From NCBI RefSeq assembly GCF_006345805.1, contig NW_021832498.1, positions 1-32,173 on the forward strand: a DNA stretch of 32,173 nt, written 5' to 3'. Both the position numbers and the translations under genes were made by a program. Each line of letters starts with the position of its first letter. Positions within the stretch are counted from its first letter, which is position 1. This DNA comes from Octopus sinensis. Its lineage: Eukaryota. Under the pieces are notes generated by a model. It saw nothing but the letters and a program-made list of their open reading frames with translations. It did no database searches and was not told the DNA's origin. This document shows, one piece after another, positions 1 through 32,173 of the stretch.

Positions 1-607
1 CCACCTTGGCTGCTACATTCCTGGCTGCTTTTTCACTTTTAAATTGCACTGTTATGGTTCCGTATTGTAATCCTTTTGTCATGTACACAATTTCCTCTCC
101 TGTCTGCTTGAGAGCCTCTTCAATTGCTTCCATGTTAATTACTTCCATCTTTTTCCCTCCATTCATAAAAACTTTATATTTAATGGTTCTACGATGGAAC
201 CAGTCTCCGCGCCCTACTGAGGGCAGCAGCTCAACCTCTCCGTTCTCGTTCTCTTTCACAAACTCCTGGAGGCCCGTCAACTTAGCCAGGTCTATCTCTC
301 TTTCCATTGACTTCTTCGTTACACCTGCGTAGGTGCCTTCCATCTTTTTCACCGCCAACTCCTCCTCAGATGTCGAAATTTCAGAGAAATTTCTCCCTTC
401 CATCTCCTCCGTTTGATGGAGGCGGCTCATAATCGCCTCAGACCGAAAAACGGCCTCCCGAACCGAAAAAGTTTAACGCGCTGAACGAGCGAAACGCGAA
501 ACCGCGTCAACGCCGTTCAGAGTTTCCACAACAACAACCACGCTTTTTTTTCTTTTTTACCGAATTTTCAGGAGCCGAAAAAAACACAACCGACGCCAAA
601 CGAAGTG
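1..607 (-). mobile_element. Unit A (5' part only) of the ORF1-only non-LTR-type element
   Basis: Aligns to the 5' portions of units B-D and is cut by the window edge. Confidence 0.85.
2..430 (-). CDS. N-terminal 143 codons of ORF1/Gag-like protein (MSRLHQTEEMEGRNFSEISTSEEELAVKKMEGTYAG...), open to the window edge
   Basis: Hand translation from the ATG at 430 is stop-free to position 2 and in frame with the ATG at 343. It is absent from the ORF track, probably because no stop lies in the window. Confidence 0.8.
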   Translation of the reverse strand, partial: MSRLHQTEEMEGRNFSEISTSEEELAVKKMEGTYAGVTKKSMEREIDLAKLTGLQEFVKENENGEVELLPSVGRGDWFHRRTIKYKVFMNGGKKMEVINMEAIEEALKQTGEEIVYMTKGLQYGTITVQFKSEKAARNVAAKV

Positions 608-619
608 CTAACGTTTCTG

Positions 620-2283
620 ATTTCTTTATTACCCACTAGGGGCTACATAGAGGGGACGTTACAAACATTGGGGACATGGAACATCACAATTACATATAAA
701 TGAGCAAAATGGAATATGAAAATGATATATGAGAGTGATACCGACGGCCCCATCCGCCAGCATCACTTATCTGTCCTTCTTCACCCAATTCCAATTAATA
801 TTCCCGTTTTTTCTATCACAACATTCGTTTTTCTTTTAGCCATCTCTATCCATTTCTCTTTCATTTCCACTGTCTTCCACCGCACACCCTCTTCCTCTAA
901 CCTTGTCGCCAATATACCCTTATCATCACTATCCACAGCCGTATAACTCCACTCTTCGTATTCGTACCACTTGGTTAACACCAGGTTTTTAACGTTTTGT
1001 ATGTCTTTCCCATGTACAACAAATAAAAAATGGGTCTTGGGACTTTCTTTGCTCTGTGTGTTTGTTTTGGATTTTCGTGTAGGCGGGGAGTGGGTGGAAT
1101 CACTGTTTGCCGGGGAGGGTTGGGACTCCAAGGGTATGGGTGGTGTCGGGGTGGGTTGGGGCTTCGCACAGTTTTTCTTTTTCCTTCTTTTTCTCTTTGT
1201 TCCCCCTTCTTTCCACTCTTGTTGCATCTCTTCTTCTGTCGTTTCCTTCTCTGTTTGTTTCTGTTTATTTTCTTCCTCTCCTGAGGCTTCCTCAACGCTT
1301 TCCTTTTCTTTTTCCTTTGGTGGGGGAGGGCAGTAGGCTCTTATGTGACCCCTTTGGCCACACTTGTAGCACCTGGGCGCCCTACCCTCCACCCACACTC
1401 TCATAATAATATTTCCAGTTTTTATGCTGTCCGTAATCCTCTCTATAACGTCCGCCTCCGTTTGAATGTTCATAACTAGTGTGGCACCTCTCACGCCTTC
1501 ATACTTCATAATGGCGTGGAGGATGTCCACTTTATCTTCATTTCCTTTTATTACCGCAGCCGTTATTACTTCGCCCTCTAGGTGTGGAGGTATTCCTTCC
1601 ACCCTAATTCTAGTTGTCCGCCTATTCAGATACGAGGGTAACAAGTAAAACTTTTCAGTACTCACCACCTTGGCTGCTACATTCCTGGCTGCTTTTTCAC
1701 TTTTAAATTGCACCGTTATGGTTCCGTATTGTAGTCCTTTTGTCATGTACACAATTTCCTCTCCTGTCTGCTTGAGAGCCTCTTCAATTGCTTCCATATT
1801 GATTACTTCCATCTTTCTCCCTCCATTCATAAAAACTTTATATTTAATGGTTCTACGATGGAACCAGTCTCCGCGCCCTACTGAGGGCAGCAGCTCAACC
1901 TCTCCGTTCTCGTTCTCCTTCACAAACTCCTGGAGGCCCGTCAACTTAGCCAGGTCTATCTCTCTTTCCATTGGCTTCTTCGTTACACCTGCGTAGGTGC
2001 CTTCCATCTTTTTCACACCAACTCAGATGCCAACCCTCCTCAGATGACGAAATTTCAGAGAAATTTCTCCCTTCCATCTCCTCCGTTTGATGGAGGCGGC
2101 TCATAATCGCCTCAGACCGAAAAACGGCCTCCCGAACCGAAAAAGTTCAACGCGCTGAACGAGCGAAACGCGAAACCGCGTCAACGCCGTTCAGAGTTTC
2201 CACAACAACAACCACGCTTTTTTTCTTTTTTACCGAATTTTCAGGAGCCGAAAAAAACACAACCGACGCCAAACGAAGTGGTG
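620..2283 (-). mobile_element. Unit B, full-length ORF1-only element (~1.66 kb)
   Basis: CpG-rich 5' UTR (~2105-2283), one long ORF, 161-nt 3' UTR ending ...GGGTAATAAAGAAAT. No ORF2. Confidence 0.85.
781..2007 (-). CDS. ORF1/Gag-like nucleic-acid-binding protein, 408 aa from the ATG at 2007: RRM-like core, CCHC zinc knuckle, K/E-rich and P/S/T-rich linker with KRKRRKKK, ~88-aa C-terminal domain
   Basis: Long ORF in the track (781-2016 from GTG). CYKCGQRGHIRAYC (1330-1371) is an exact CX2CX4HX4C preceded by RVWVEGRAPR, a context typical of L1/Tx1-clade ORF1 and ZCCHC3-like proteins. The ancestral N-terminus (ATG 2104) is frameshifted by a net 10-bp insertion. Confidence 0.85.
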   Translation of the reverse strand: MEGTYAGVTKKPMEREIDLAKLTGLQEFVKENENGEVELLPSVGRGDWFHRRTIKYKVFMNGGRKMEVINMEAIEEALKQTGEEIVYMTKGLQYGTITVQFKSEKAARNVAAKVVSTEKFYLLPSYLNRRTTRIRVEGIPPHLEGEVITAAVIKGNEDKVDILHAIMKYEGVRGATLVMNIQTEADVIERITDSIKTGNIIMRVWVEGRAPRCYKCGQRGHIRAYCPPPPKEKEKESVEEASGEEENKQKQTEKETTEEEMQQEWKEGGTKRKRRKKKNCAKPQPTPTPPIPLESQPSPANSDSTHSPPTRKSKTNTQSKESPKTHFLFVVHGKDIQNVKNLVLTKWYEYEEWSYTAVDSDDKGILATRLEEEGVRWKTVEMKEKWIEMAKRKTNVVIEKTGILIGIG

Positions 2284-2292
2284 ACGTTTCTG

Positions 2293-3952
2293 ATTTCTTT
2301 ATTACCCACTAGGGGCTACATAGAGGGGACGTTACAAACATTGGGGACATGGAACATCACAATTACATATAAATGAGCAAAATGGAATATGAAAATGATA
2401 TATGAGAGTGATACCGACGGCCCCATCCGCCAGCATCACTTATCTGTCCTTCTTCACCCAATTCCAATTAATATTCCCGTTTTTTCTATCACAACATTCG
2501 TTTTACTTTTAGCCATCTCTATCCATTTCTCTTTCATTTCCACTGTCTTCCACCGCACACCCTCTTCCTCTAACCTTGTCTCCAATATACCCTTATCATC
2601 ACTATCCACAGCCGTATAACTCCACTCTTCGTATTCGTACCACTTGGTCAACACCAGGTTTTTAACGTTTTTAACGTTTTGTATGTCTTTCTCATGTACA
2701 ACAAATAAAAAATGGGTCTTGGGACTTTCTTTGCTCTGTGTGTTTGTTTTGAATTTTCGTGTAGGCGGGGAGTGGGTGGAATCACTGTTTGCCGGGGAGG
2801 GTCGGGACTCCAAGGGTATGGGTGGTGTCGGGGTGGGTTGGGGCTTCGCACAGTTTTTCTTTTTCTTTTTTCTTTTTCTCTTTGTTCCCCCCTCCTTCCA
2901 CTCTTGTTGCATCTCTTCCTCTGTCGTTTCCTTCTCTGTCTGTTTATTTTCTTCCTCTCCTGAGGCTTCCTCAACGCTTTCCTTTTCTTTTTCCTTTGGT
3001 GGGGGAGGGCAGTAGGCTCTTATGTGACCCCTTTGGCCACACTTGTAGCACCTGGGCGCCCTACCCTCCACCCACACTCTCATAATAATGTTTCCAGTTT
3101 TTATGCTGTCCGTAATCCTCTCTATAACGTCCGCCTCCGTTTGAATGTTCATAACTAGTGTGGCACCTCTCACGCCTTCATACTTCATAATGGCGTGGAG
3201 GATGTCCACTTTATCTTCATTCCTTTTATTACCGCAGCCGTTATTACTTCGCCCTCTAGGTGTGGAGGTATTCCTTCCACCCTAATTCTAGTTGTCCGCC
3301 TATTCAGATACGAGGGTAACAAGTAAAACTTTTCAGTACTCACCACCTTGGCTGCTACATTCCTGGCTGCTTTTTCACTTTTAAATTGCACCGTTATGGT
3401 TCCGTATTGTAGTCCTTTTGTCATGTACACAATTTCCTCTCCTGTCTGCTTGAGAGCCTCTTCAATTGCTTCCATATTGATTACTTCCATCTTTCTCCCT
3501 CCATTCATAAAAACTTTATATTTAATGGTTCTACGATGGAACCAGTCTCCGCGCGCCCTACTGAGGGCAGCAGCTCAACCTCTCCGTTCTCGTTCTCCTT
3601 CACAAACTCCTGGAGGCCCGTCAACTTAGCCAGGTCTATCTCTCTTTCCATTGCTTCTTCGTTACACCTGCGTAGGTGCCTTCCATCTTTTTCACCGCCA
3701 ACTCCTCCTCAGATGACGAAATTTCAGAGAAATTTCTCCCTCCATCTCCTCCGTTTGATGGAGGCGGCTCATAATCGCCCTCAGACCGAAAAACGGCCTC
3801 CCGAACCGAAAAAGTTCAACGCGCTGAACGAGCGAAACGCGAAACCGCGTCAACGCCGTTCAGAGTTTCCACAACAACAACCACGCTTTTTTTCTTTTTT
3901 ACCGAATTTTCAGGAGCCGAAAAAAACACAACCGACGCCAAACGAAGTGGTG
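2293..3952 (-). mobile_element. Unit C, full-length ORF1-only element
   Basis: Aligns end to end with unit B. Confidence 0.85.
2454..3772 (-). pseudogene. Frameshifted ORF1 copy in unit C
   Basis: Versus units A/B: -1 near 3740, -1 near 3653, +2 near 3551, -1 near 3220, plus in-frame indels (9-bp KNV duplication near 2660). Some single-base indels could be assembly errors. Confidence 0.8.
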
Positions 3953-3961
3953 ACGTTTCTG

Positions 3962-5643
3962 ATTTCTTTATTTACCCACTAGGGGCCACATAGAGGGGAC
4001 GTTACAAACATTGGGGACATGGAACATCACAATTACATATATATGAGCAAAATGGAATATGAAAATGATATATGAGAGTGATACCGACGGCCCCATCCGC
4101 CAGCATCACTTATCTGTCCTTCTTCACCCATTTTCAATTAGCATTCCATTCTTTCCTATCACAACATTCGTTTTTCTTTCAGCCATCTCTATCCATTCCT
4201 CTTTCATTTCCACTGACTTCCACCGCACACCCTCTTCCTCTAACCTTGTCGCCAATATACCCGTATCATCACTATCCACAGCCGTATAACTCCAATCTTC
4301 GTGTTCGTACCACTTGGTCAACACCTGCTTTTTAACGTTTTGTATGTCTTTCCCATGTATAACACATAAAAAATGGGTCTGGGGACTTTCTTTGCTTTGT
4401 GTGTTTGTTTTGGATTTTCTTGTAGGAGGGGAGTGGGTGGAATCACTGTTTGCCGGGGAGGGTTGGGACTCCAAGGGTATGGGTGGTGTCGGGGTGGGTT
4501 GGGGCTTCGCACAGTTTTTCTTTTTCCTTCTTTTTCTCTTTGTTCCCCCTTCTTTCCACTCTTGTTGCATCTCTTCTTCTGTCGTTTCCTTCTCTGTTTG
4601 TTTCTGTTTATTTCTCTTCCTCTCTGGGGCTTCCTCAACGCTTTCCTTCTTTTTTTCTTTTTCCTTTGGTGGGGGAGGGCAGTAGGCTCTTATGTGACCC
4701 CTTTGGCCACACTTGTAGCACCTGGGCGCCCTACCCTCCACCCACACTTCATAATAATATTTCCAGTTTTTATGCTGTCCGTAATCCTCTCTATAACATC
4801 CGCCTCCGTTTGAATGTTCATAACTAGTGTGGCACCTCTCACGCCTTCATACTTCATAATGGCGTGGAGGATGTCCACTTTATCTTCGTTTCCTTTTATA
4901 ACCGCAGCCGTTATTAATTCGCCCTCTAGGTGTGGAGGTATTCCTTCCACCCTAATTCTAGTTGTCCGCCTATTCAGATACGAGGGTAACAAGTAAAACT
5001 TTTCAGTACTCACCACCTTGGCTGCTACATTCCTGGCTGCTTTTTCACTTTTAAATTGCACCGTTATGGTTCCGTATTGTAATCCTTTTGTCATGTACAC
5101 AATTTCCTCTCCTGTCTGCTTGAGAGCCTCTTCAATTGCTTCCATGTTAATTACTTCCATCTTTCTCCCTCCATTCATAAAAACTTTATATTTAATGGTT
5201 CTACGATGGAACCAGTCTTCCGCGCGCTCTCCTGACTGAGGCAGCAGCTCCACCTCTCTCCGTTTTCGTCCTCCTTCACAACTCCTGGAGGCCCGTCAAC
5301 TTAGCCAGGTCTGTCTATCTCTCTTTCCATTGACTTCTTCGTTACACCTGCGTAGGTGCCTTCCATCTTTTTCACCGCCAACTCCTCCTCAGATGACGAT
5401 ACTTCCGTCGAAATTTCAGAGAAATTTCTCCCTTCCATCTCCTCCGTTTGATGGAGGCGGCTCATAATCGCCTCAGACCGAAAAACGGCCTCCCGAACCG
5501 AAAAAGTTTAACGCGCTGAACGAGCGAAACGCGAAACCGCGTCAACGCCGTTCAGAGTTTCCACAACAACAACCACGCTTTTTTTCTTTTTTACCGAATT
5601 TTCAGGAGCCGAAAAAAACACAACCGACGTCAACGAAGTGGTG
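3962..5643 (-). mobile_element. Unit D, full-length ORF1-only element (5'-most, outer end of the array)
   Basis: Aligns end to end with unit B; homology ends at about 5643-5652. Confidence 0.85.
4124..5465 (-). pseudogene. Frameshifted ORF1 copy in unit D
   Basis: -1 indel near 4748 splits ORFs 4124-4747 and 4690-5253; several indels at 5218-5320; in-frame 12-bp insertion near 5400. Confidence 0.8.
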
Positions 5644-5666
5644 CCGTTTCTGCCAGCTCGCTGTCT
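5644..5666 (-). other. Remnant of a tRNA-derived SINE head (A-box region), presumed insertion target at the outer array end
   Basis: Minus strand reads AGACAGCGAGCTGGCAGAAACGG. TGGCAGAA matches the head of the degenerate SINE at 19761, and AGAAACG matches the junction spacers and 32111-32125. Confidence 0.6.
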
Positions 5667-6207
5667 TCGTGAAGCTATAAACAGTAGCAGGTAAATATCC
5701 GGTTGAAAAACGCTTTGAGATAAAAAGTTGGAGGCTCCCGTAGACAAGAGAGTCGTTCTAAAGTTGGACCAAAGCATTTCCGTCCATTTTCAAAGCTTTA
5801 TTCTTACCGGCGAGAATTGTTTGTTGTTGATGTCATAGGAATTTATAAACTTTTGAGAAAACGTGAAATAATTATTTGTTTTTGAACAATGGATCTCGAA
5901 GCACGTAAAGCAATAAATACGTGTTTCGAGTCCCACTGTTCCAGAAAGAATTGTTTTATGATCTCTCGAGAGTTTATACATTTTTATGACGTCAACGTGA
6001 GAATTATTTTCGCTTTCACTTTTAGCGAATAGGAAAACTAGTGCTCACGAATCTTTATAGAGGCTCCGAAACTGGAACGCTCATGGGATAGAGCAAGGTG
6101 TCCTTAATTTGGGGACTTGGGCCGAATGCTTGCAACAGAGCGGATCTTGCTAAAGGTACCCAAGGACCAGGGGATGTTAAACAGAGCGACGGATTCAATC
6201 TAGTAAA

Positions 6208-6300
6208 TTCTTCTTCTTCTTCTTCTTTTTCTTCTTCTTCTTCTTCTTCTTCTTCTTCTTCTTCTTCTTCTTCTTCTTCTTCTTCTTCTTCTTCTTCTTC
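6208..6300. repeat. (TTC)n microsatellite, ~31 units
   Basis: Direct reading. Confidence 0.97.
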
Positions 6301-6315
6301 TTTATATGTGTGTGT

Positions 6316-6716
6316 CTCTCTTTTTATCTCTTTTATCTCTTTTACTTGTTTCACTCATTTGACTGTGGCCATGCTGGAGCACCGCCTTTAGTCGAGCAAA
6401 TCGACCCCAGGACTTATTCTTTGGAAGCCTAGTACTTATTCTATCGGTCTCTTTTTATCGAACCGCTAAGTTACAGGGACGTAAACACACCAGTATCGGT
6501 TGTCAAATGATGTAGGGGGACGGGACAAACACAGACATACAAACATATATACACATATATATACGACGGGCTTCTTTCAGTTTCCCTCTACCAAATCTAC
6601 TCTCAAGGTTTTGGTCGGCTCGTGGCTATAGGAGAAGACACTTCCCAAGGTGCCATGCAGTGGGAATGAACCCGGAACCATGTGGTTCGTAAGCAAGCTA
6701 CTTACTATACAGCCAC
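6316..6716 (-). mobile_element. tRNA-derived SINE, family S1 (CORE-like CCTTGGGAAGTG motif, internal microsatellite, (GAGATAAAA)n-type tail)
   Basis: Homologous to copies at 14790, 15606, 27545, 28440 and 31190; B-box-like GGTTCATTCC on the minus strand. Confidence 0.85.
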
Positions 6717-9925: not shown

Positions 9926-10438
9926 CCATACGTGTGTGTTTGTGTGTGTGTGTGTATTTAGAGGCATATATATATATATATATATACAACTTATAAATAA
10001 GGGCAAACGAAAAAAATTCTAATGCCAAATATGCCGAAATTGGACATATTGTCCATAACCAACATGTTTATAATTTTAACCTTGAAAGGTATTTTTTAAT
10101 ATGCTGGCCATTGATAAAATATTTTCTTTCGAAAAAAAAATTTTATCCTACATTAAATATATATATATATATCCACACACATATATATAATATTATATAA
10201 TATAATATAATATAATATATATATATATAATATATAATAATATATATGTATGTATGATATATAATGTATTAATATGTATTGTGCGTGATTGTATGCGTGA
10301 TGTAAGTGTGTGTGGGGATATATTTTAGATGATAGAGAAATTAGTAGAGTGGACTGGTAAACCTTGAAGGTTGTGCTGTAGCATGGCCAGTATCCTGAAA
10401 CGAAGCAGAATATATATGCGAGTGTACGTGAGGAGTAC

Positions 10439-10504
<66 letters not shown>

Positions 10505-10981
10505 GTATGTATGTATGTGTGCCTAAGTAAAACATTTAACGTGTTGCTAATAAGTGTTGGTAGATAGAAAATTCACCACAAACGAATAAGAGGCGTATGT
10601 TGAAAGACAACGTGTACAGTGTATACAGAAACGTTTGGAAAGGCAAAAACTTTCTAAGACTTTTTACACTTCTGTCAACTCTGTCAGACAATCATTAACG
10701 GTAACCATATTCTTTGATCATTAATCATCGTTCCAATCAAGTGTCTGTTATTACCAATTAATGGAAGCGTCATTAACGTGGTGTTCTTCAGTGTTACGCT
10801 GGAGACGTTCTTTTAACTGATGCTAACGATTCCATCTAATAGTTTACTACTGGTCGTAAACGGCACGCCGACCGGATGCGAACACATTCTTAGCCATATA
10901 TATATATACAACACACGCACACAAAAGTACTTCGTACATACATATGTGTACACATACATGCAATATATATACATACATACA

Positions 10982-11013
<32 letters not shown>

Positions 11014-11089
11014 AATATATATAATGTACACACACAAAAAATAACAGACACAAAATCAGACGCATAAATACAGAATCTACACTCAAACA

Positions 11090-11277
11090 CTCATGATATA
11101 TATACATATATACATCTGCATACATAAATTATATATATATATATATATATGTTATATTATATATATGTATATATATATATATGTATATTTATATATATAT
11201 ATATAGATTTATATATATGTATATATATATAGATATATATATATATAATATTATATATATGTATATATATATGTGTG

Positions 11278-11310
<33 letters not shown>

Positions 11311-11416
11311 TATATATATTATGGAATATATATATATTATATATATATTATATATATACATCCTCTATACTATATATAATATATATATATATATTATATA
11401 TATGTATATATATATA

Positions 11417-11448
<32 letters not shown>

Positions 11449-11600
11449 CATACAGACACGGAGAGTCAGATATAGGTAGGTAAAATACAGATGTATACAC
11501 TAAAATACACACACACACTCGCACACATATATGTATATGTATATATAAACACATTATATACACTAGCATACCCGAGTGCACAAAGCCATTAATGTATATG

Positions 11601-11632
<32 letters not shown>

Positions 11633-11689
11633 CAACAATTTTATATATATATATATATATATATACATTAATGGGTTTATCTATCGATC

Positions 11690-11779
<90 letters not shown>

Positions 11780-12010
11780 CTATCTATCTATCTATCTATA
11801 TATATATATATATATCTATATAACTATTATCACCCCTCCCACCGCTCACTACACATAAAGTAAACTTATGCATGACACATTTGTGTATTTATCTCTCCCT
11901 AACTTTACTCATACTAAACACAAACAAAACACACACACACACACACATACAGACACACACACGCACTCACCACACATGCGTTCATGCACACACAAGACAC
12001 ACATAACAAC

Positions 12011-12058
<48 letters not shown>

Positions 12059-12061
12059 GTA

Positions 12062-12092
<31 letters not shown>

Positions 12093-12222
12093 CATATATG
12101 TGTGTGTGTGTGTGTGTGACAATAGTTTCGCGTAATTGAATGTACACACCAGAACATACCTGTGTGCACTTATACACCCACGCACTCACAACTCATGTCC
12201 ATCTGTGTATCCATATCTATCA

Positions 12223-12275
<53 letters not shown>

Positions 12276-12284
12276 CATATACAC

Positions 12285-12327
<43 letters not shown>

Positions 12328-12440
12328 AAACATTTGATTAAAATATAAGTATGTATAAATTTATGCATATATTTAAACACATGTAGTCCCATACTTTAGC
12401 ACACATGTGTATATGTACATATGGATACATGCATGTGTTG

Positions 12441-12471
<31 letters not shown>

Positions 12472-12675
12472 GTGTGTGTTGTATGTGAGTGGGTGTGTGT
12501 GTGTGTGTGGTGTGTGTGTGTGTGTGTTGTGTGTAGATATATACGTATACACACTCACAACACACACTCACACAAACAAATGTACATATCATATGCTTAT
12601 ATATGTAAAAGTATATATATATATATAATATATATGTACATATGTAAATAAATTTATATATATATATGTATATAT

Positions 12676-12716
<41 letters not shown>

Positions 12717-12909
12717 TATATTTATACTTACAAATTTATATATATTATATGTGTGTGTGTTTACATATTTACATATATACACTGAAATATATATATAACT
12801 GTACATATATATCATATATATATAAGATATATATATTATAAATATAAATATATGAATATAGATCAATTTGTGTATAGATATATATACAAAGTCATATATA
12901 CTACATATA

Positions 12910-12947
<38 letters not shown>

Positions 12948-13024
12948 ATAAATATATGAATATAGATATAAATTTATGTATACAAATATATATACAAATA
13001 CATATATATACAGATACATGTATA

Positions 13025-13060
<36 letters not shown>

Positions 13061-13521
13061 TTTGATTTTGATTTTTCCAGTTTCAGCTCATGAGCTGTGG
13101 CACTTATATATATATATATAAATTTATGCACACACAAGCATATATACACACAGACACATTTATATGCCAGAGTCATATATCGATAGGAACGTATTCATGC
13201 AGATACATAAATAATGAACACGTGCGCAAACATAATTGTTTAGTTTTTCGTAATGTATGCATAATGAATATATATTATACATTACTCGTTTAATTATTCA
13301 ATTAATCTATCATTCAATTCATTTCTCCATGTTTCTGTATGTATGTATGTATGTATGTATGTATGTATCTATCTATGTATGTATGTATGTATGTATGAAT
13401 GTATGTATGTATGTATGTATCTATCTATCTATCTATCAGTCTTTATTCTATACACACGCAATTATACATATATTTATATACAAGTACGTATTATATATAT
13501 GTATACATGTATATGTCTCTG

Positions 13522-13598
<77 letters not shown>

Positions 13599-13675
13599 GT
13601 ATCTATGTATCTATGTATCTATCTATGTATCTATGTATCTATCTATCTATGTATCTATGTATCTATGTATCTATG

Positions 13676-13751
<76 letters not shown>

Positions 13752-13799
13752 AATGCATATATATACACTCACAAACACGCACACACTCACACACACAAA

Positions 13800-13850
<51 letters not shown>

Positions 13851-13880
13851 CTCACATATATGTATGCGTATATGTAAGTA
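11090..13880. repeat. Compound microsatellite block: (AT)n, (ATCT)n, (ATGT)n, (AC)n
   Basis: Direct reading; it accounts for the many Y/I/H/T low-complexity ORFs. Confidence 0.95.
13058..13101 (-). mobile_element. Short 3'-end retroposon fragment with (AAAATC)n tail
   Basis: GTTTCAGCTCATGAGCTGTGGC is shared with 24401-24456. Confidence 0.55.
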
Positions 13881-14378
13881 TGTATGCATTTGCAAACTGG
13901 AGCTTATACGAAGTGTATTCGCCTATGCTTACCAATACATAATAATAACTGCACATCGCATTGTGCTCTATTTGGCAGACATCGCGTACCTCCGCGTATA
14001 TACTCTGCCACGTATATACATTCACACACATAATGGATTTCATTATGGGTAATTAACTTATCCCAATAATTAGATTTCGGCAAATTACCTTATTGTCACT
14101 GTAATAGCCATCGCTAATATCGTTAGTGTTATTTTCTTTACTTTTATGATCAGTATGCTTTTAATTTTCAATGTTCTCATTATTTTTCTCTCATAATGAT
14201 GTTACATTTTTGCTCTTTCTTCTAGGTTGTACTTTATAATAGAATATTGTACTCTATTATACTATATTGTACACTATTGACCTCTATTGTACTCTATTAT
14301 ACTCCATTGTACGGCATTTTATTACGTTATATTTTGTTTTGTTCTGATTTATAAAATAACCTCTCTCTACATGTATCT

Positions 14379-23513: not shown

Positions 23514-23584
23514 CTACAGATATTATAGTCAGCACTGATTTCTTTAGAAAATTTGTAGCGATGACCTTAACACGTGAATTATGT

Positions 23585-23729
23585 GCACTGCTAATACAGT
23601 ACTGCACTTCTAACACAGTACTGCACTACTAACACAGTACTGCACTGCTAACACAGAACTCCACTGCTAACGCAGTACTGCACAGCTAACACAGTACTGC
23701 ACTGCTAACACAGTACTGCACTGCTAACA
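23585..23729. repeat. 19-bp minisatellite (CTAACACAGTACTGCACTG) x ~7.5
   Basis: Units start at 23591, 23610, 23629, 23648, 23667, 23686, 23705 and 23724. Confidence 0.95.
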
Positions 23730-27544: not shown

Positions 27545-27972
27545 ATTTGACTGCAGCCATGCTGAAGCACCGCCTTTAGTCAAACAAATCGACCCCAGGA
27601 CTTATTCTTTTTAAGCCTAGTACTTATTCTATCGGTCTCTTTTTGCCGAACCGCTAAGTTACAGGAAAGTAAACACACCAGCATCGAATGTTAAGCGATG
27701 TTGAGGCGACACACACACACACACAGACACAAACACAAACACACATACATACACACAATCAGATACACACACACACATACATATACACATATACTCACAC
27801 ATATACACATATATACGACAGGCTTCTTTCAGTTTGCGTCTACCAAATCCACTCACAAGATTTGGTCGGCCCGAGGCTATAGTAGAAGACATTTGACCAA
27901 GGTGCCACGCTGTGGGACTGAACCCATGTGGTTGAAAAGCAAGCTACTTACCATACAGTCACTCCTGCACCT
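27545..27972 (-). mobile_element. SINE family S1, near full length including the 5' start
   Basis: Alignment to other S1 copies; the head begins AGGTGCAGGAGTGACTGTATGG on the minus strand. Confidence 0.85.
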
Positions 27973-28439
27973 ATATATATATAATCATGGAGAATGATAT
28001 CATTGATAGTGACTTCGAAGTCTTGGCCAGCTAAGCCATCTTCGGTTAGCTTAGCTGGTCGAAACTTCGAAGTCCTTGTTAATGATATTCTTGTTTAAGA
28101 TTAACAAAATCTATACTCTACAAAAGTATCAAGTAACCCATTAGATTAACGTAAATATGCTTTTGTTATGAGTGAAGGGGAAAAAAAACATTAACACGGA
28201 GGCACACAGACACAGATGCACACGCACATACAGACACACACGCATACACACACACATACATACATACATACATACATACATACATGCATACATACATGCA
28301 TACATACATGCATGCATACATACATGCATGCATACATACATACATACATACATACATACATGCATGCATGCATACATACATACATGCATGCATGCATGCA
28401 TACGCACATACACACACACATACATACATACATATATTT

Positions 28440-31425: not shown

Positions 31426-31571
31426 GTATGTATATGCATTTGTGTATACATATATATATTCGACGGGCTTCTTTCAGTTTCCCTCTACCAAACCCACTCA
31501 CAAGGCTTTGGTCTACCCGAGGCTATAGTAGAAGACACTGGCCAAAGGTGCTACGCAGTAGGACTGAACCG
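31190..31571 (-). mobile_element. SINE family S1, degenerate
   Basis: Alignment to other S1 copies. Confidence 0.8.
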
Positions 31572-31756: not shown

Positions 31757-32173
31757 ATTTTCTACTCTGGGCACAAGCCCTGAAATTTTTGGCAAGGGAG
31801 CCAATCGATTAGATCGACTCCAGTACACAACTGGTACTTAGTTATCGACCCCAAAGGATGAAAGGCAAAATCGACCTCGACGGAATTTGAAATCAGAACA
31901 CAAAGAGAGAGGAAATACCTATTTCTGTACTACCCACAAGGGGCTAAACACAGAGAGGACAAACAAGGACAGACAAAGGGATTAAGTCGATTATATCAAC
32001 CCCAGTGCGTAACTGTTACTTATTTAATCGACCCCGAAAGGATGAAAGGCAAAGTCGACCTCAGCGGTATTTGAACTCAGAACGTAGCTTGTTGTGTGTG
32101 GTGTGTGTGTGTGCTAACGTTTCTTATTTCTTTATTGCCCACATGGGGCTAAACATAGAGGGGACAACAAGGA
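31757..32173 (-). mobile_element. Nested head-to-tail chain of tRNA-derived SINEs with a Meta/MESC-like central domain
   Basis: Two copies of GTTCTGA(G/T)TTCAAAT..GAGGTCGA(C/T)TTTGCCTTTCATCCTTT(C)GGGGTCGAT, and two copies of the tail ..AGCCCC..GTGGG..A(A/G)TA(A/C)AGAAAT (ending at 32126 and 31921), each directly followed by SINE-head sequence. Confidence 0.85.

What the first reader, a model, noticed from the sequence alone, without database searches (positions are those of the whole stretch)
605..657. ORF1 element and a SINE 31 kb away share the same ~40-nt 3' tail and adjoining target
Seen: 605-657 versus 32111-32165 are identical at 49 of 53 aligned bases plus a 2-bp indel; homology stops just beyond GAGGGGAC. 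A third copy lies at 31921-31960. On the minus strand the tail has a small stem-loop: GCCC-CTAGT-GGGT (unit), GCCC-CATGT-GGGC and GCCC-CTTGT-GGGT (SINEs). The differences fall in the loop or swap G-U for G-C. Known: SINEs mobilised by stringent LINEs share the LINE 3' end, often a stem-loop. Inference: a protein-coding half-LINE and a non-coding SINE are both clients of one unseen autonomous LINE, making a three-component system.
Basis: partly seen in the sequence, partly recalled or inferred. Interest (0 to 1): 0.8.

Follow-up and report, generated by a model that had tools for sequence, protein, structure and literature searches.

The report
Octopus half-LINE and SINE share LINE tail
A tandemly repeated, ORF1-only "half-LINE" and a nearby SINE in this octopus-type window end in the same small stem-loop tail, and that tail belongs to an L1-type LINE with reverse transcriptase found intact in other octopod genomes, so this is a real but conceptually familiar three-tier retrotransposon family.

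Summary
The segment 605-657 recurs at every junction of a tandem array on the minus strand (units of about 1.67 kb, window 1-5652). It matches two SINE tails at 32111-32165 and 31920-31969.

Each array unit is an ORF1-only element. It encodes two RRM-like folds plus a CCHC knuckle and has no ORF2.

Relatives of that ORF in Octopus vulgaris, O. sinensis and Argonauta hians sit directly upstream of an L1-clade ORF2 with endonuclease, reverse transcriptase and zf-RVT domains. Those LINEs end in the same tail: U-rich arm, GC clamp, CUUGU loop, then AAUAAAGAAAU. The GC clamp covaries between lineages.

ORF1-only copies elsewhere carry the tail and clean target duplications of 16 and 19 bp. They cluster together (50-55% identity against 27-38% to LINE ORF1s). 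The "SINE fragment captured once" alternative is therefore refuted.

The 15 bases at 605-619 are target DNA, a duplicated piece of a SINE head. The same head position was hit at least three independent times.

This resembles HAL1 or HeT-A with a stringent LINE/SINE pair, so it is a new member of a known kind. Trans-mobilisation is inferred, not shown. No RT gene lies in the window itself.

The parts
620..657 (-). 3' tail of half-LINE unit B (GTCCCCTCTATGTAGCCCCTAGTGGGTAATAAAGAAAT). The hairpin GCCC-CUAGU-GGGU is at 631-643.
605..619 (-). 15-bp piece of a SINE head (CAGAAACGTTAGCAC) between units B and A. It is target-site-duplication-like, not part of the element.
1..604 (-). Half-LINE unit A, 5' part only because the window edge cuts it. 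The 5'UTR and ORF start (ATG at 430) have an open N-terminal reading frame.
620..2277 (-). Half-LINE unit B. The ORF at 781-2016 gives 411 aa from a GTG; the ATG region near 2103 is frameshifted. There is no ORF2: only about 160 nt separate the ORF1 stop from the element end.
2278..2292 (-). Second copy of the 15-bp SINE-head piece (CAGAAACGTCACCAC).
2293..3946 (-). Half-LINE unit C, with several frameshifts. Its tail is at 2293-2330.
3947..3961 (-). Third copy of the 15-bp SINE-head piece.
3962..5637 (-). Half-LINE unit D, the 5'-most unit on the minus strand, with frameshifts. Its tail is at 3962-4000.
5638..5690 (-). Remnant of the target SINE head upstream of the array (..TTCACGAAGACAGCGAGCTGG + CAGAAACGGCACCAC).
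32125..32173 (-). 3' tail of a SINE copy, cut by the window end. The hairpin GCCC-CAUGU-GGGC is at 32137-32149.
32088..32124 (-). Head of the next SINE, hit at the same position (AGAAACGTTAGCAC at 32111-32124). About 35 nt of that head are then replaced by CA-rich sequence.
31757..32087 (-). Dimeric SINE. The A-monomer carries an internal type-A tail (31920-31969, hairpin 31932-31944). The B-monomer ends in a type-B tail (31757-31805).

Best explanation
The window carries, on its minus strand, at least 3.4 tandem copies of a non-autonomous ORF1-only LINE derivative (a 'half-LINE'). This element belongs to an L1-clade LINE family that is found across octopods.

The autonomous members encode ORF1p (two RRM-like domains plus a CCHC knuckle) and ORF2p (APE endonuclease, reverse transcriptase, zf-RVT). 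Their RNA ends precisely, without a poly(A) tail, in a conserved stem-loop. A U-rich arm pairs with AAUAAAGAA around a short GC clamp with a CUUGU loop.

The half-LINE kept the 5'UTR, ORF1 and the last ~120 nt of the 3'UTR, including this stem-loop, and lost ORF2. The SINE kept only about the last 45 nt.

Most likely (inferred), ORF2p of the autonomous LINE recognises the stem-loop. It then starts target-primed reverse transcription right at ..AAAGAAAU on its own RNA, on half-LINE RNA and on SINE RNA, giving 15-19-bp target duplications.

The 15 bases next to the tail are target DNA. The first half-LINE landed in the head of a resident SINE, at GG^CAGAAACG, a position hit repeatedly. The array then grew by a second insertion at the regenerated site and/or by unequal exchange between the duplicated 15-mers.
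For: Shown directly:
- Array structure and junctions.
- The ORF has homologues almost only in octopods: 437 at E<=0.001, with named members from O. vulgaris, O. bimaculoides, O. sinensis and Argonauta.
- In L002, L003, L004 and L005 the homologous ORF1 is followed by ORF2. That ORF2 has Exo_endo_phos, RVT_1 and zf-RVT domains and matches human L1 ORF2p at E=2e-71.
- Those LINEs end in ..GTCCCCTCT.TGTT.GCCCCTTGTGGGTAATAAAGAAAT.
- Joining the L001 flanks rebuilds an intact SINE (193/240 identical), so that 1598-bp ORF1-only element is a clean insertion with a 19-bp duplication.
- The L004 half-LINE has an intact 463-aa ORF and a 16-bp duplication.
- The half-LINE ORFs are 50-55% identical to each other and 27-38% to LINE ORF1s.
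- The half-LINE 3'UTR aligns with the LINE 3'UTR at scores of 67-95, against 28+-5 for shuffles.
- Between the window and L004 half-LINEs, the non-coding ends (81% identical) are better conserved than the ORF (69% nt, 55% aa).
- Hairpin: 86-90% of cells are paired and 3 of 4 pairs show double-sided changes. The covariation score is 0.42-0.45 against 0.18-0.19 for shuffles (0/500), and slid controls reach at most 0.16.
- Argonauta LINE and SINE tails share the GCC/GGC clamp, and Octopus LINE and SINE tails share GCCC/GGGU.
- The AF2 model of residues 20-235 (pLDDT 80-90) matches tandem RRM structures.
Against: - No ORF2 or RT of this family lies in the window, and the window's species is unknown. 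The partner LINE is shown only in related genomes.
- All window units carry frameshifts, so these copies are dead.
- The stem-loop is small and AU-rich. Folding energies are not better than shuffles (z from -0.9 to +1.0).
- Covariation rests on about 4-5 independent lineages, and treating the type-B SINE tails as homologous is an assumption.
- The half-LINE 5'UTR shows no significant similarity to the sampled LINE 5'UTRs.
- Recognition of the tail by ORF2p, and trans-mobilisation itself, were not and cannot be tested here.
Confidence: 0.85

Rival explanations
1. The tail in the unit is a SINE fragment that happened to lie next to an ORF-bearing sequence. It was then copied only by local tandem duplication.
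For: Within the window the tail is seen only at array junctions, next to SINE-head sequence. The units are 95-99% alike.
Against: - Dispersed ORF1-only copies in O. sinensis (L001, L004) carry the same tail at the same place, with their own target duplications.
- RT-bearing LINEs carry it too.
- The half-LINE tails share a private loop variant (CUAGU) that is absent from SINE tails.
- Homology to the LINE 3'UTR extends about 110-150 nt, well beyond the SINE-shared part.
Confidence: 0.02
2. The ORF units are a host gene family: a domesticated gag/ORF1-like gene amplified in tandem, not a mobile element.
For: Relatives are annotated as ordinary genes by NCBI and UniProt. The L004 copy has an intact ORF. 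The protein is a plausible RNA-binding protein.
Against: - Three of the four window units are frameshifted and the fourth is cut by the window edge.
- Copies have target duplications and lie inside other repeats.
- Copies share LINE UTRs.
- Close relatives are ORF1 of intact LINEs.
- The non-coding ends are more conserved than the ORF.
Confidence: 0.04
3. ORF1-only copies arise again and again as deletion products of full-length LINEs during or after integration. They do not propagate as their own lineage, so there is no stable 'middle tier'.
For: Internal deletions of LINEs are common (general knowledge). Only three half-LINE loci were seen.
Against: - All three share the same architecture: ORF1 end ..GGTAAGYGATG, then ~120-160 nt of 3'UTR, then the tail.
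- They are each other's closest relatives.
- The window and L004 copies share an 81%-identical private 5'UTR and the CUAGU loop.
- Two of them have their own target duplications.
Confidence: 0.07
4. The SINE-head bases next to the tail (605-619) belong to the element. On this view the LINE, half-LINE and SINE share a 5' end, and arrays come from template jumping at RNA 5' ends. The bases would then not be target DNA.
For: - The same joint AAAGAAAT + (C/A)AGAAACGTTAGCAC occurs in three contexts.
- LINE arrays in L004 have almost direct tail-to-head joints.
- The L002 LINE 5' end (..AGGACGTTAC..) faintly resembles the SINE head.
Against: - In L001 the two flanks rebuild one continuous SINE with a 19-bp duplication.
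- The SINE head continues about 35 nt upstream of the joint at the 5'-most unit.
- The L004 half-LINE and the L005 LINE have unrelated targets.
Confidence: 0.05

Closest known systems
HAL1 ('half-L1') of mammals
   Same: A non-autonomous L1-clade derivative that encodes only ORF1p, keeps the LINE ends and depends on ORF2p supplied in trans (described in PMC5753468 and PMC5786205).
   Different: Here ORF1p is of the RRM + CCHC type rather than coiled-coil/RRM/CTD. The 3' end is a specific stem-loop without poly(A). The host is a cephalopod. A SINE shares the same tail.
HeT-A / TART / TAHRE of Drosophila telomeres; Ag-Sponge of Anopheles
   Same: A gag/ORF1-only element works beside RT-encoding relatives (PMC5786205). 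HeT-A and its partners form mixed head-to-tail arrays (own knowledge), as seen in L004.
   Different: Those elements belong to the Jockey or CR1 clades. HeT-A is telomere-specific and domesticated. No SINE partner is involved, and the arrays here are interstitial.
Stringent LINE/SINE pairs with a shared 3' stem-loop (e.g. eel UnaL2/UnaSINE1, tortoise CR1/PolIII SINE; Ohshima & Okada, cited in PMC9115989 and PMC5786205)
   Same: The SINE 3' end is homologous to the LINE 3' end. There is a short conserved stem-loop, and copies end precisely without a poly(A) tail.
   Different: The partner here is L1-clade, where relaxed poly(A) recognition is the textbook case. Stringent L1s are known from Ohshima 2012, cited in PMC5786205. 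A protein-coding middle tier is also present.
Tx1-group and Zepp-type L1-clade elements that pile up head-to-tail or in specific repeats (own knowledge)
   Same: L1-clade ORF2 with a C-terminal zinc knuckle and an RRM + CCHC ORF1. Insertions lie in repeats ((ATT)n in L003, a SINE head here), and tandem arrays form.
   Different: Strict target specificity is not met: the L004 half-LINE and the L005 LINE have unrelated targets. No RT phylogeny was done.

Membership tests
LINE/SINE pair sharing a 3' tail (stringent type) | SINE 3' end homologous to the 3' end of an RT-encoding LINE | tested here: met
   Tails were aligned in A7 and A9. LINE tails are in L002, L003, L004 and L005, and SINE tails are in the window, L001, L004 and L005.
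LINE/SINE pair sharing a 3' tail (stringent type) | Conserved secondary structure in the shared tail | tested here: met
   A 4-bp clamp with 3 pairs changed on both sides and 86-90% of cells paired, beating shuffled and slid controls. It is a small helix from few lineages, and the folding energy is not exceptional.
LINE/SINE pair sharing a 3' tail (stringent type) | SINE head derived from a Pol III small RNA (tRNA, 5S, 7SL) | tested here: inconclusive
   ARAGORN finds no tRNA. Rfam finds no tRNA match even at E<=1 on full copies. Only a box-B-like GAGTTCAAATTCC was seen by eye.
LINE/SINE pair sharing a 3' tail (stringent type) | The tail is required for recognition by the LINE reverse transcriptase | not testable with these tools
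   Needs a retrotransposition or binding assay.
ORF1-only non-autonomous LINE (HAL1-like) | Encodes a homologue of LINE ORF1p and no ORF2 | tested here: met
   ORF1 homology to the L002-L005 LINEs and no ORF2 hit in the window. Only ~160 nt lie between the stop codon and the element end.
ORF1-only non-autonomous LINE (HAL1-like) | Shares terminal sequences with the autonomous LINE | tested here: met
   The 3' end is shared over 110-150 nt. The 5' end is not significantly similar to the sampled LINEs, so only the 3' side is met.
ORF1-only non-autonomous LINE (HAL1-like) | Dispersed copies with target-site duplications | tested here: met
   L001 has a 19-bp duplication and a rebuilt empty site. 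L004 has a 16-bp duplication.
L1 clade of non-LTR retrotransposons | APE endonuclease + RT + C-terminal Cys/His motif; closest to L1 ORF2p | tested here: met
   Pfam Exo_endo_phos, RVT_1 and zf-RVT. The best solved-structure matches are human L1 ORF2p at E=2e-71. A formal RT phylogeny was not done.
Site-specific LINE (Tx1-like) | Insertions confined to one target sequence | tested here: not met
   Targets differ: a SINE head (window, L001), a LINE 5' end (L004), (ATT)n (L003) and a unique site (L005). Only a hot spot in the SINE head is supported.

The most novel reading that the evidence does not exclude
Beyond tail sharing, this family may home to the ends of its own relatives. Three independent insertions hit the same nucleotide of the SINE head. 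A SINE landed exactly at another SINE's 5' edge. A half-LINE landed in the first 16 nt of a LINE. Different LINE subfamilies stand head-to-tail in one array. If this reflects a real targeting mechanism, octopods would have interstitial, self-assembling mixed arrays of LINE, half-LINE and SINE, analogous to Drosophila telomeric arrays. The mechanism could be endonuclease or priming preference, or template jumping. The ORF1-only lineage would be long-lived, with its cis-acting ends more constrained than its protein.
Probability: 0.35. Interest if true: 0.6.

Novelty: new member of a known kind. Interest (0 to 1): 0.45.

Why it matters
It names a likely driver for part of the SINE load of octopus genomes. 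That driver is an L1-clade LINE with intact ORF1 and ORF2 in O. vulgaris. The octopus TE paper I read lists only RTE and Dong elements as full-length candidates (PMC9115989).

It also gives a compact natural system to study how an L1-type reverse transcriptase recognises a specific 3' structure. The system has an autonomous LINE, an ORF1-only element and SINEs that share one small covarying stem-loop. The same system can address how ORF1-only parasites persist and how transposon tandem arrays form. The principle itself is well established.

Tried and rejected
- **Rfam and ARAGORN.** Rfam at gathering thresholds and ARAGORN on the window gave nothing. This removed an early idea of hammerhead-bearing retrozymes or Penelope-like tandem elements. 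It also left the tRNA origin of the SINE unconfirmed.
- **Exact look-ups.** Exact look-up of the window ORF, and of P0009 and P0152, found nothing on record. I therefore could not extend the window leftwards to see the far end of the array.
- **Word-indexed protein searches.** These returned only 1 and 5 relatives. The full HMMER scan was needed to find the family.
- **LTR idea.** I considered that tail plus head might form a short LTR of a gag-only LTR element. I rejected it: there is no terminal repeat structure, and the ORF2 relatives are L1-like.
- **Shared 5' end idea.** I considered that the SINE head belongs to the element. The L001 empty-site reconstruction rejects this.
- **Microhomology priming.** I considered priming between the tail's AGAAA and the target's CAGAAAC. 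I rejected it because both motifs are kept in full at the joint.
- **AGGTAYTTCC.** I first read this as part of the SINE tail. It is the start of the second monomer of a dimeric SINE.
- **RTE-like fragment.** An RTE-like LINE fragment in L001 (15641-15988) ends in (ATG)n and does not carry the tail.
Full report
**1. What the window is**

The sequence is SINE-rich and full of microsatellites. Its repeats match Octopus sinensis, O. vulgaris and Argonauta loci fetched later, so it is octopod DNA of unknown species. Rfam at gathering thresholds and ARAGORN find nothing in it.

**2.

- blastn of the right-hand SINE region against the window aligns 605-657 with 32111-32165. There are 49 identities in 55 columns, two of them gaps.
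- blastn also aligns 31920-31969 with the same tail.
- A 25-nt tail pattern finds four sites against none expected by chance.
- The segment also lies at 2278-2330 and 3947-4000. These are the junctions of a tandem array of a ~1670-bp unit that fills 1-5652 on the minus strand.

**3. The array unit**

Each unit has four parts:
- a ~175-nt 5'UTR;
- an ORF of about 445 codons;
- about 160 nt of 3'UTR;
- the tail ..GTCCCCTCTATGTAGCCCCTAGTGGGTAATAAAGAAAT.

Units B, C and D carry different frameshifts. Unit A is cut by the window edge.

Pfam sees only a CCHC knuckle in the ORF. An AlphaFold model built on 16 relatives is confident for residues 20-235 (pLDDT 80-90). That region matches tandem RRM proteins such as IMP3 and HuR. 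The protein is therefore two RRM-like domains, one zinc knuckle and a long disordered basic region. From my own knowledge, this is the make-up of 'type I' LINE ORF1 proteins.

**4. The relatives reveal the autonomous LINE**

The word-indexed search gave one relative. The full HMMER scan gave 437, of which 94 had E<=1e-10. The named ones come from O. vulgaris, O. bimaculoides, O. sinensis and Argonauta hians.

Fetching the DNA around four of them was decisive.

- **O. vulgaris (L002).** The homologous ORF1 is followed by an intact 1132-aa ORF2. This ORF2 has Exo_endo_phos, RVT_1 and zf-RVT domains. It matches human L1 ORF2p over residues 3-868 at E=2e-71. Three such 5.3-kb elements stand head to tail.
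- **O. sinensis (L004).** This locus holds one ORF1-only element followed by three ORF1+ORF2 elements of different subfamilies.
- **O. sinensis (L003) and Argonauta (L005).** Each holds a single full LINE.

All of these LINEs end in the same tail, for example ..TTGTATTGTCCCATTCTTCGTTGGCCCCTTGTGGGTAATAAAGAAAT in L004. The 'unseen autonomous LINE' therefore exists. It is L1-clade and carries the tail. No ORF2 of the family lies in the window itself.

**5. The unit is a true, mobile half-LINE**

- In L001 the 1598-bp ORF1-only element sits between two copies of CAGAAAYGTTAGCACGCCG. Joining the flanks rebuilds a continuous SINE, 193 of 240 positions identical to a neighbouring intact copy.
- In L004 the ORF1-only element has an intact 463-aa ORF and a perfect 16-bp duplication, GGATGTGATATAATGA.
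- The three half-LINE ORFs are 50-55% identical to each other but only 27-38% to the ORF1 of RT-bearing LINEs.
- They share the same layout: the ORF1 end at ..GGTAAGYGATG is the ORF1/ORF2 overlap of the full LINE. It is followed by only ~120-160 nt.
- That 3' stretch aligns with the last 110-150 nt of LINE 3'UTRs at scores of 67-95, against 28+-5 for shuffles.
- The window and L004 copies also share a private 5'UTR (z about 38-40) and a private loop variant, CUAGU.
- Between these two copies the non-coding ends are 81% identical, while the ORF is 69% identical in nucleotides and 55% in amino acids. This fits elements whose cis-acting ends matter more than their protein.
- The half-LINE 5'UTR shows no significant similarity to the sampled LINE 5'UTRs.

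**6. The SINE**

Full copies are ~215-250 bp and begin ..GGTGGCGAGCTGGCAGAAWCGTTAGCACGCCGGGCGAAATGC... I saw two tail types.

- **Type A** is the LINE tail discussed here.
- **Type B** is ..AAATTTCGGCCTTGTGCCTAGAGTAGAAAAGATTATT. It resembles the tail of the distant L003 LINE, which ends in (ATT)n and sits inside an (ATT)n tract.

A monomer with type A as its real 3' end and a 17-bp duplication lies at L001 18016-18232.

The window's 'third copy' is different. The stretch from 32087 to 31757 on the minus strand is a dimeric SINE, with an A-monomer then a B-monomer. It is colinear with an independent copy in L004, 288 of 334 positions identical. Its type-A tail is therefore internal.

Neither ARAGORN nor Rfam recognises a tRNA in the head. 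Only a box-B-like motif is visible.

**7. The stem-loop**

RNAfold shows the same design in LINE, half-LINE and SINE tails. A U-rich arm (UCUUUGUU) pairs with AAUAAAGAA around a 3-4-bp GC clamp closed by CUUGU. Energies are not better than shuffles (z from -0.9 to +1.0), as expected for a short AU-rich helix.

The comparative signal is better. The clamp differs by lineage:

| Tail | Clamp |
|---|---|
| Octopus type A | GCCC/GGGU |
| Argonauta LINE | UGCC/GGCG |
| Argonauta SINEs | AGCC/GGCU or GCC/GGC |
| L003 LINE | GCC/GGC |
| Type B SINE | GGC/GCC |

On 18 and on 23 tails, 86-90% of cells pair and three of the four pairs show changes on both sides. The covariation score is 0.42-0.45 against 0.18-0.19 in shuffles (0 of 500 reach it). 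Slid registers reach at most 0.16.

LINE and SINE tails match within a lineage. A covariance model built from the tails finds no further copy in window 6-31 kb.

The caveats are that the helix has only four pairs, that only four or five lineages are independent, and that homology of the type-B tails is assumed.

**8. The 'adjoining target'**

The bases 605-619 (minus strand CAGAAACGTTAGCAC) are positions ~13-27 of the SINE head. At the 5'-most unit the head continues upstream (..TTCACGAAGACAGCGAGCTGG, 5653-5690). The array therefore lies in a SINE head, and the 15-mer is repeated between units like a target duplication.

The same nucleotide, GG^CAGAAACG, was used in three independent cases:
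- by the diverged L001 half-LINE, with a 19-bp duplication;
- by the window array;
- by the SINE at the right window edge, which abuts AGAAACGTTAGCAC of the dimer's head.

Other insertions have unrelated targets. This is a hot spot, not strict specificity.

**9. How the arrays form is not settled**

The window units are a mosaic of 95-99% identity. That fits repeated insertion at the regenerated site followed by unequal exchange, a model proposed for Drosophila TE tandems (own knowledge). The mixed-subfamily array in L004 has almost direct tail-to-head joints. It cannot be a local duplication and points to successive end-targeted insertion or template jumping.

**10. Comparison and verdict**

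ORF1-only non-autonomous LINEs are known: HAL1 from L1, HeT-A from Jockey and Ag-Sponge from CR1 (PMC5786205, PMC5753468). Sharing of a LINE 3' stem-loop by SINEs is classical. The octopus paper I read lists only RTE and Dong elements as full-length LINEs (PMC9115989), so this L1-clade family and its clients may be undescribed there. I could not check Repbase.

The finding is real and well interpreted, and it is a new member of a known kind. What remains inferred is that ORF2p recognises the tail and mobilises the half-LINE and the SINE in trans.

Noticed in passing
L004 2476-20850 (O. sinensis CM016867.1): One head-to-tail array holds a half-LINE followed by at least three full LINEs of different subfamilies. 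Their ORF2 is 68-95% identical to the O. vulgaris copy. The joints are almost direct (tail + CA/CC + ACTGAATACTCGTCAT..). This cannot be a local duplication.
   Followed up: partly
L002 4400-19300 (O. vulgaris OX597840.1): Three near-identical 5.3-kb full-length L1-clade LINEs stand in tandem. The first has intact ORF1 and an intact 1132-aa ORF2, so it is a candidate active element.
   Followed up: partly
window 5638-5652, 32111-32124; L001 9439-9457 and 11056-11074: Three independent insertions (two diverged half-LINEs and one SINE) use the same nucleotide of the SINE head, GG^CAGAAACG. This is a hot spot with no obvious microhomology explanation.
   Followed up: partly
window 31757-32087; L004 433-816: A dimeric SINE: an A-monomer with an internal LINE-type tail, joined at GGTATTTC to a B-monomer with a second tail type. 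It is present as independent copies in two genomes, so the dimer itself transposes.
   Followed up: partly
L003 9700-9790 and 15320-15375: A distant LINE of the same family ends in (ATT)n and lies inside an (ATT)n microsatellite. SINE tail type B also ends in ATTATT, which suggests a second LINE/SINE pairing.
   Followed up: partly
window 620-2277 versus L004 2492-4185: Between two half-LINE copies, the 5'UTR and 3'UTR are 81% identical but the ORF is only 69% identical (55% in amino acids). The non-coding ends are the more constrained part.
   Followed up: partly
window 32088-32110: About 35 nt of a SINE head (GCCGGGCGAAATGC..TCTGCCG) are replaced by 23 nt of CA-rich sequence.
   Followed up: no
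window 6330-6715, 27860-27990, 31440-31560: Copies of other short interspersed repeats (..GACGGGCTTCTTTCAGTTTCC.TCTACCAAA.. and ..TTGACTGTGGCCATGCTGGAGCACCGCC..). They are unrelated to the tail family.
   Followed up: no
window 10000-14000: A very AT-rich stretch (GC 21-30%) made almost wholly of AT, TATC/TCTA and ACAT microsatellites.
   Followed up: no
window 23584-23729 and 6208-6302: A 19-bp tandem repeat (7.7 copies, 90% matches) and a (TTC)32 tract.
   Followed up: no
L001 15641-15988; L001 327-1208 and 2748-3176: An RTE-like LINE 3' end finishing in (ATG)n, without the tail, and mariner-like transposase ORFs.
   Followed up: no
protein P0026 (O. bimaculoides, MetaClust): A predicted 1135-aa protein combines Helitron-like N-terminal and PIF1 helicase domains with a fragment of this ORF1 family. 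It is probably a gene-model chimera across nested transposons.
   Followed up: no
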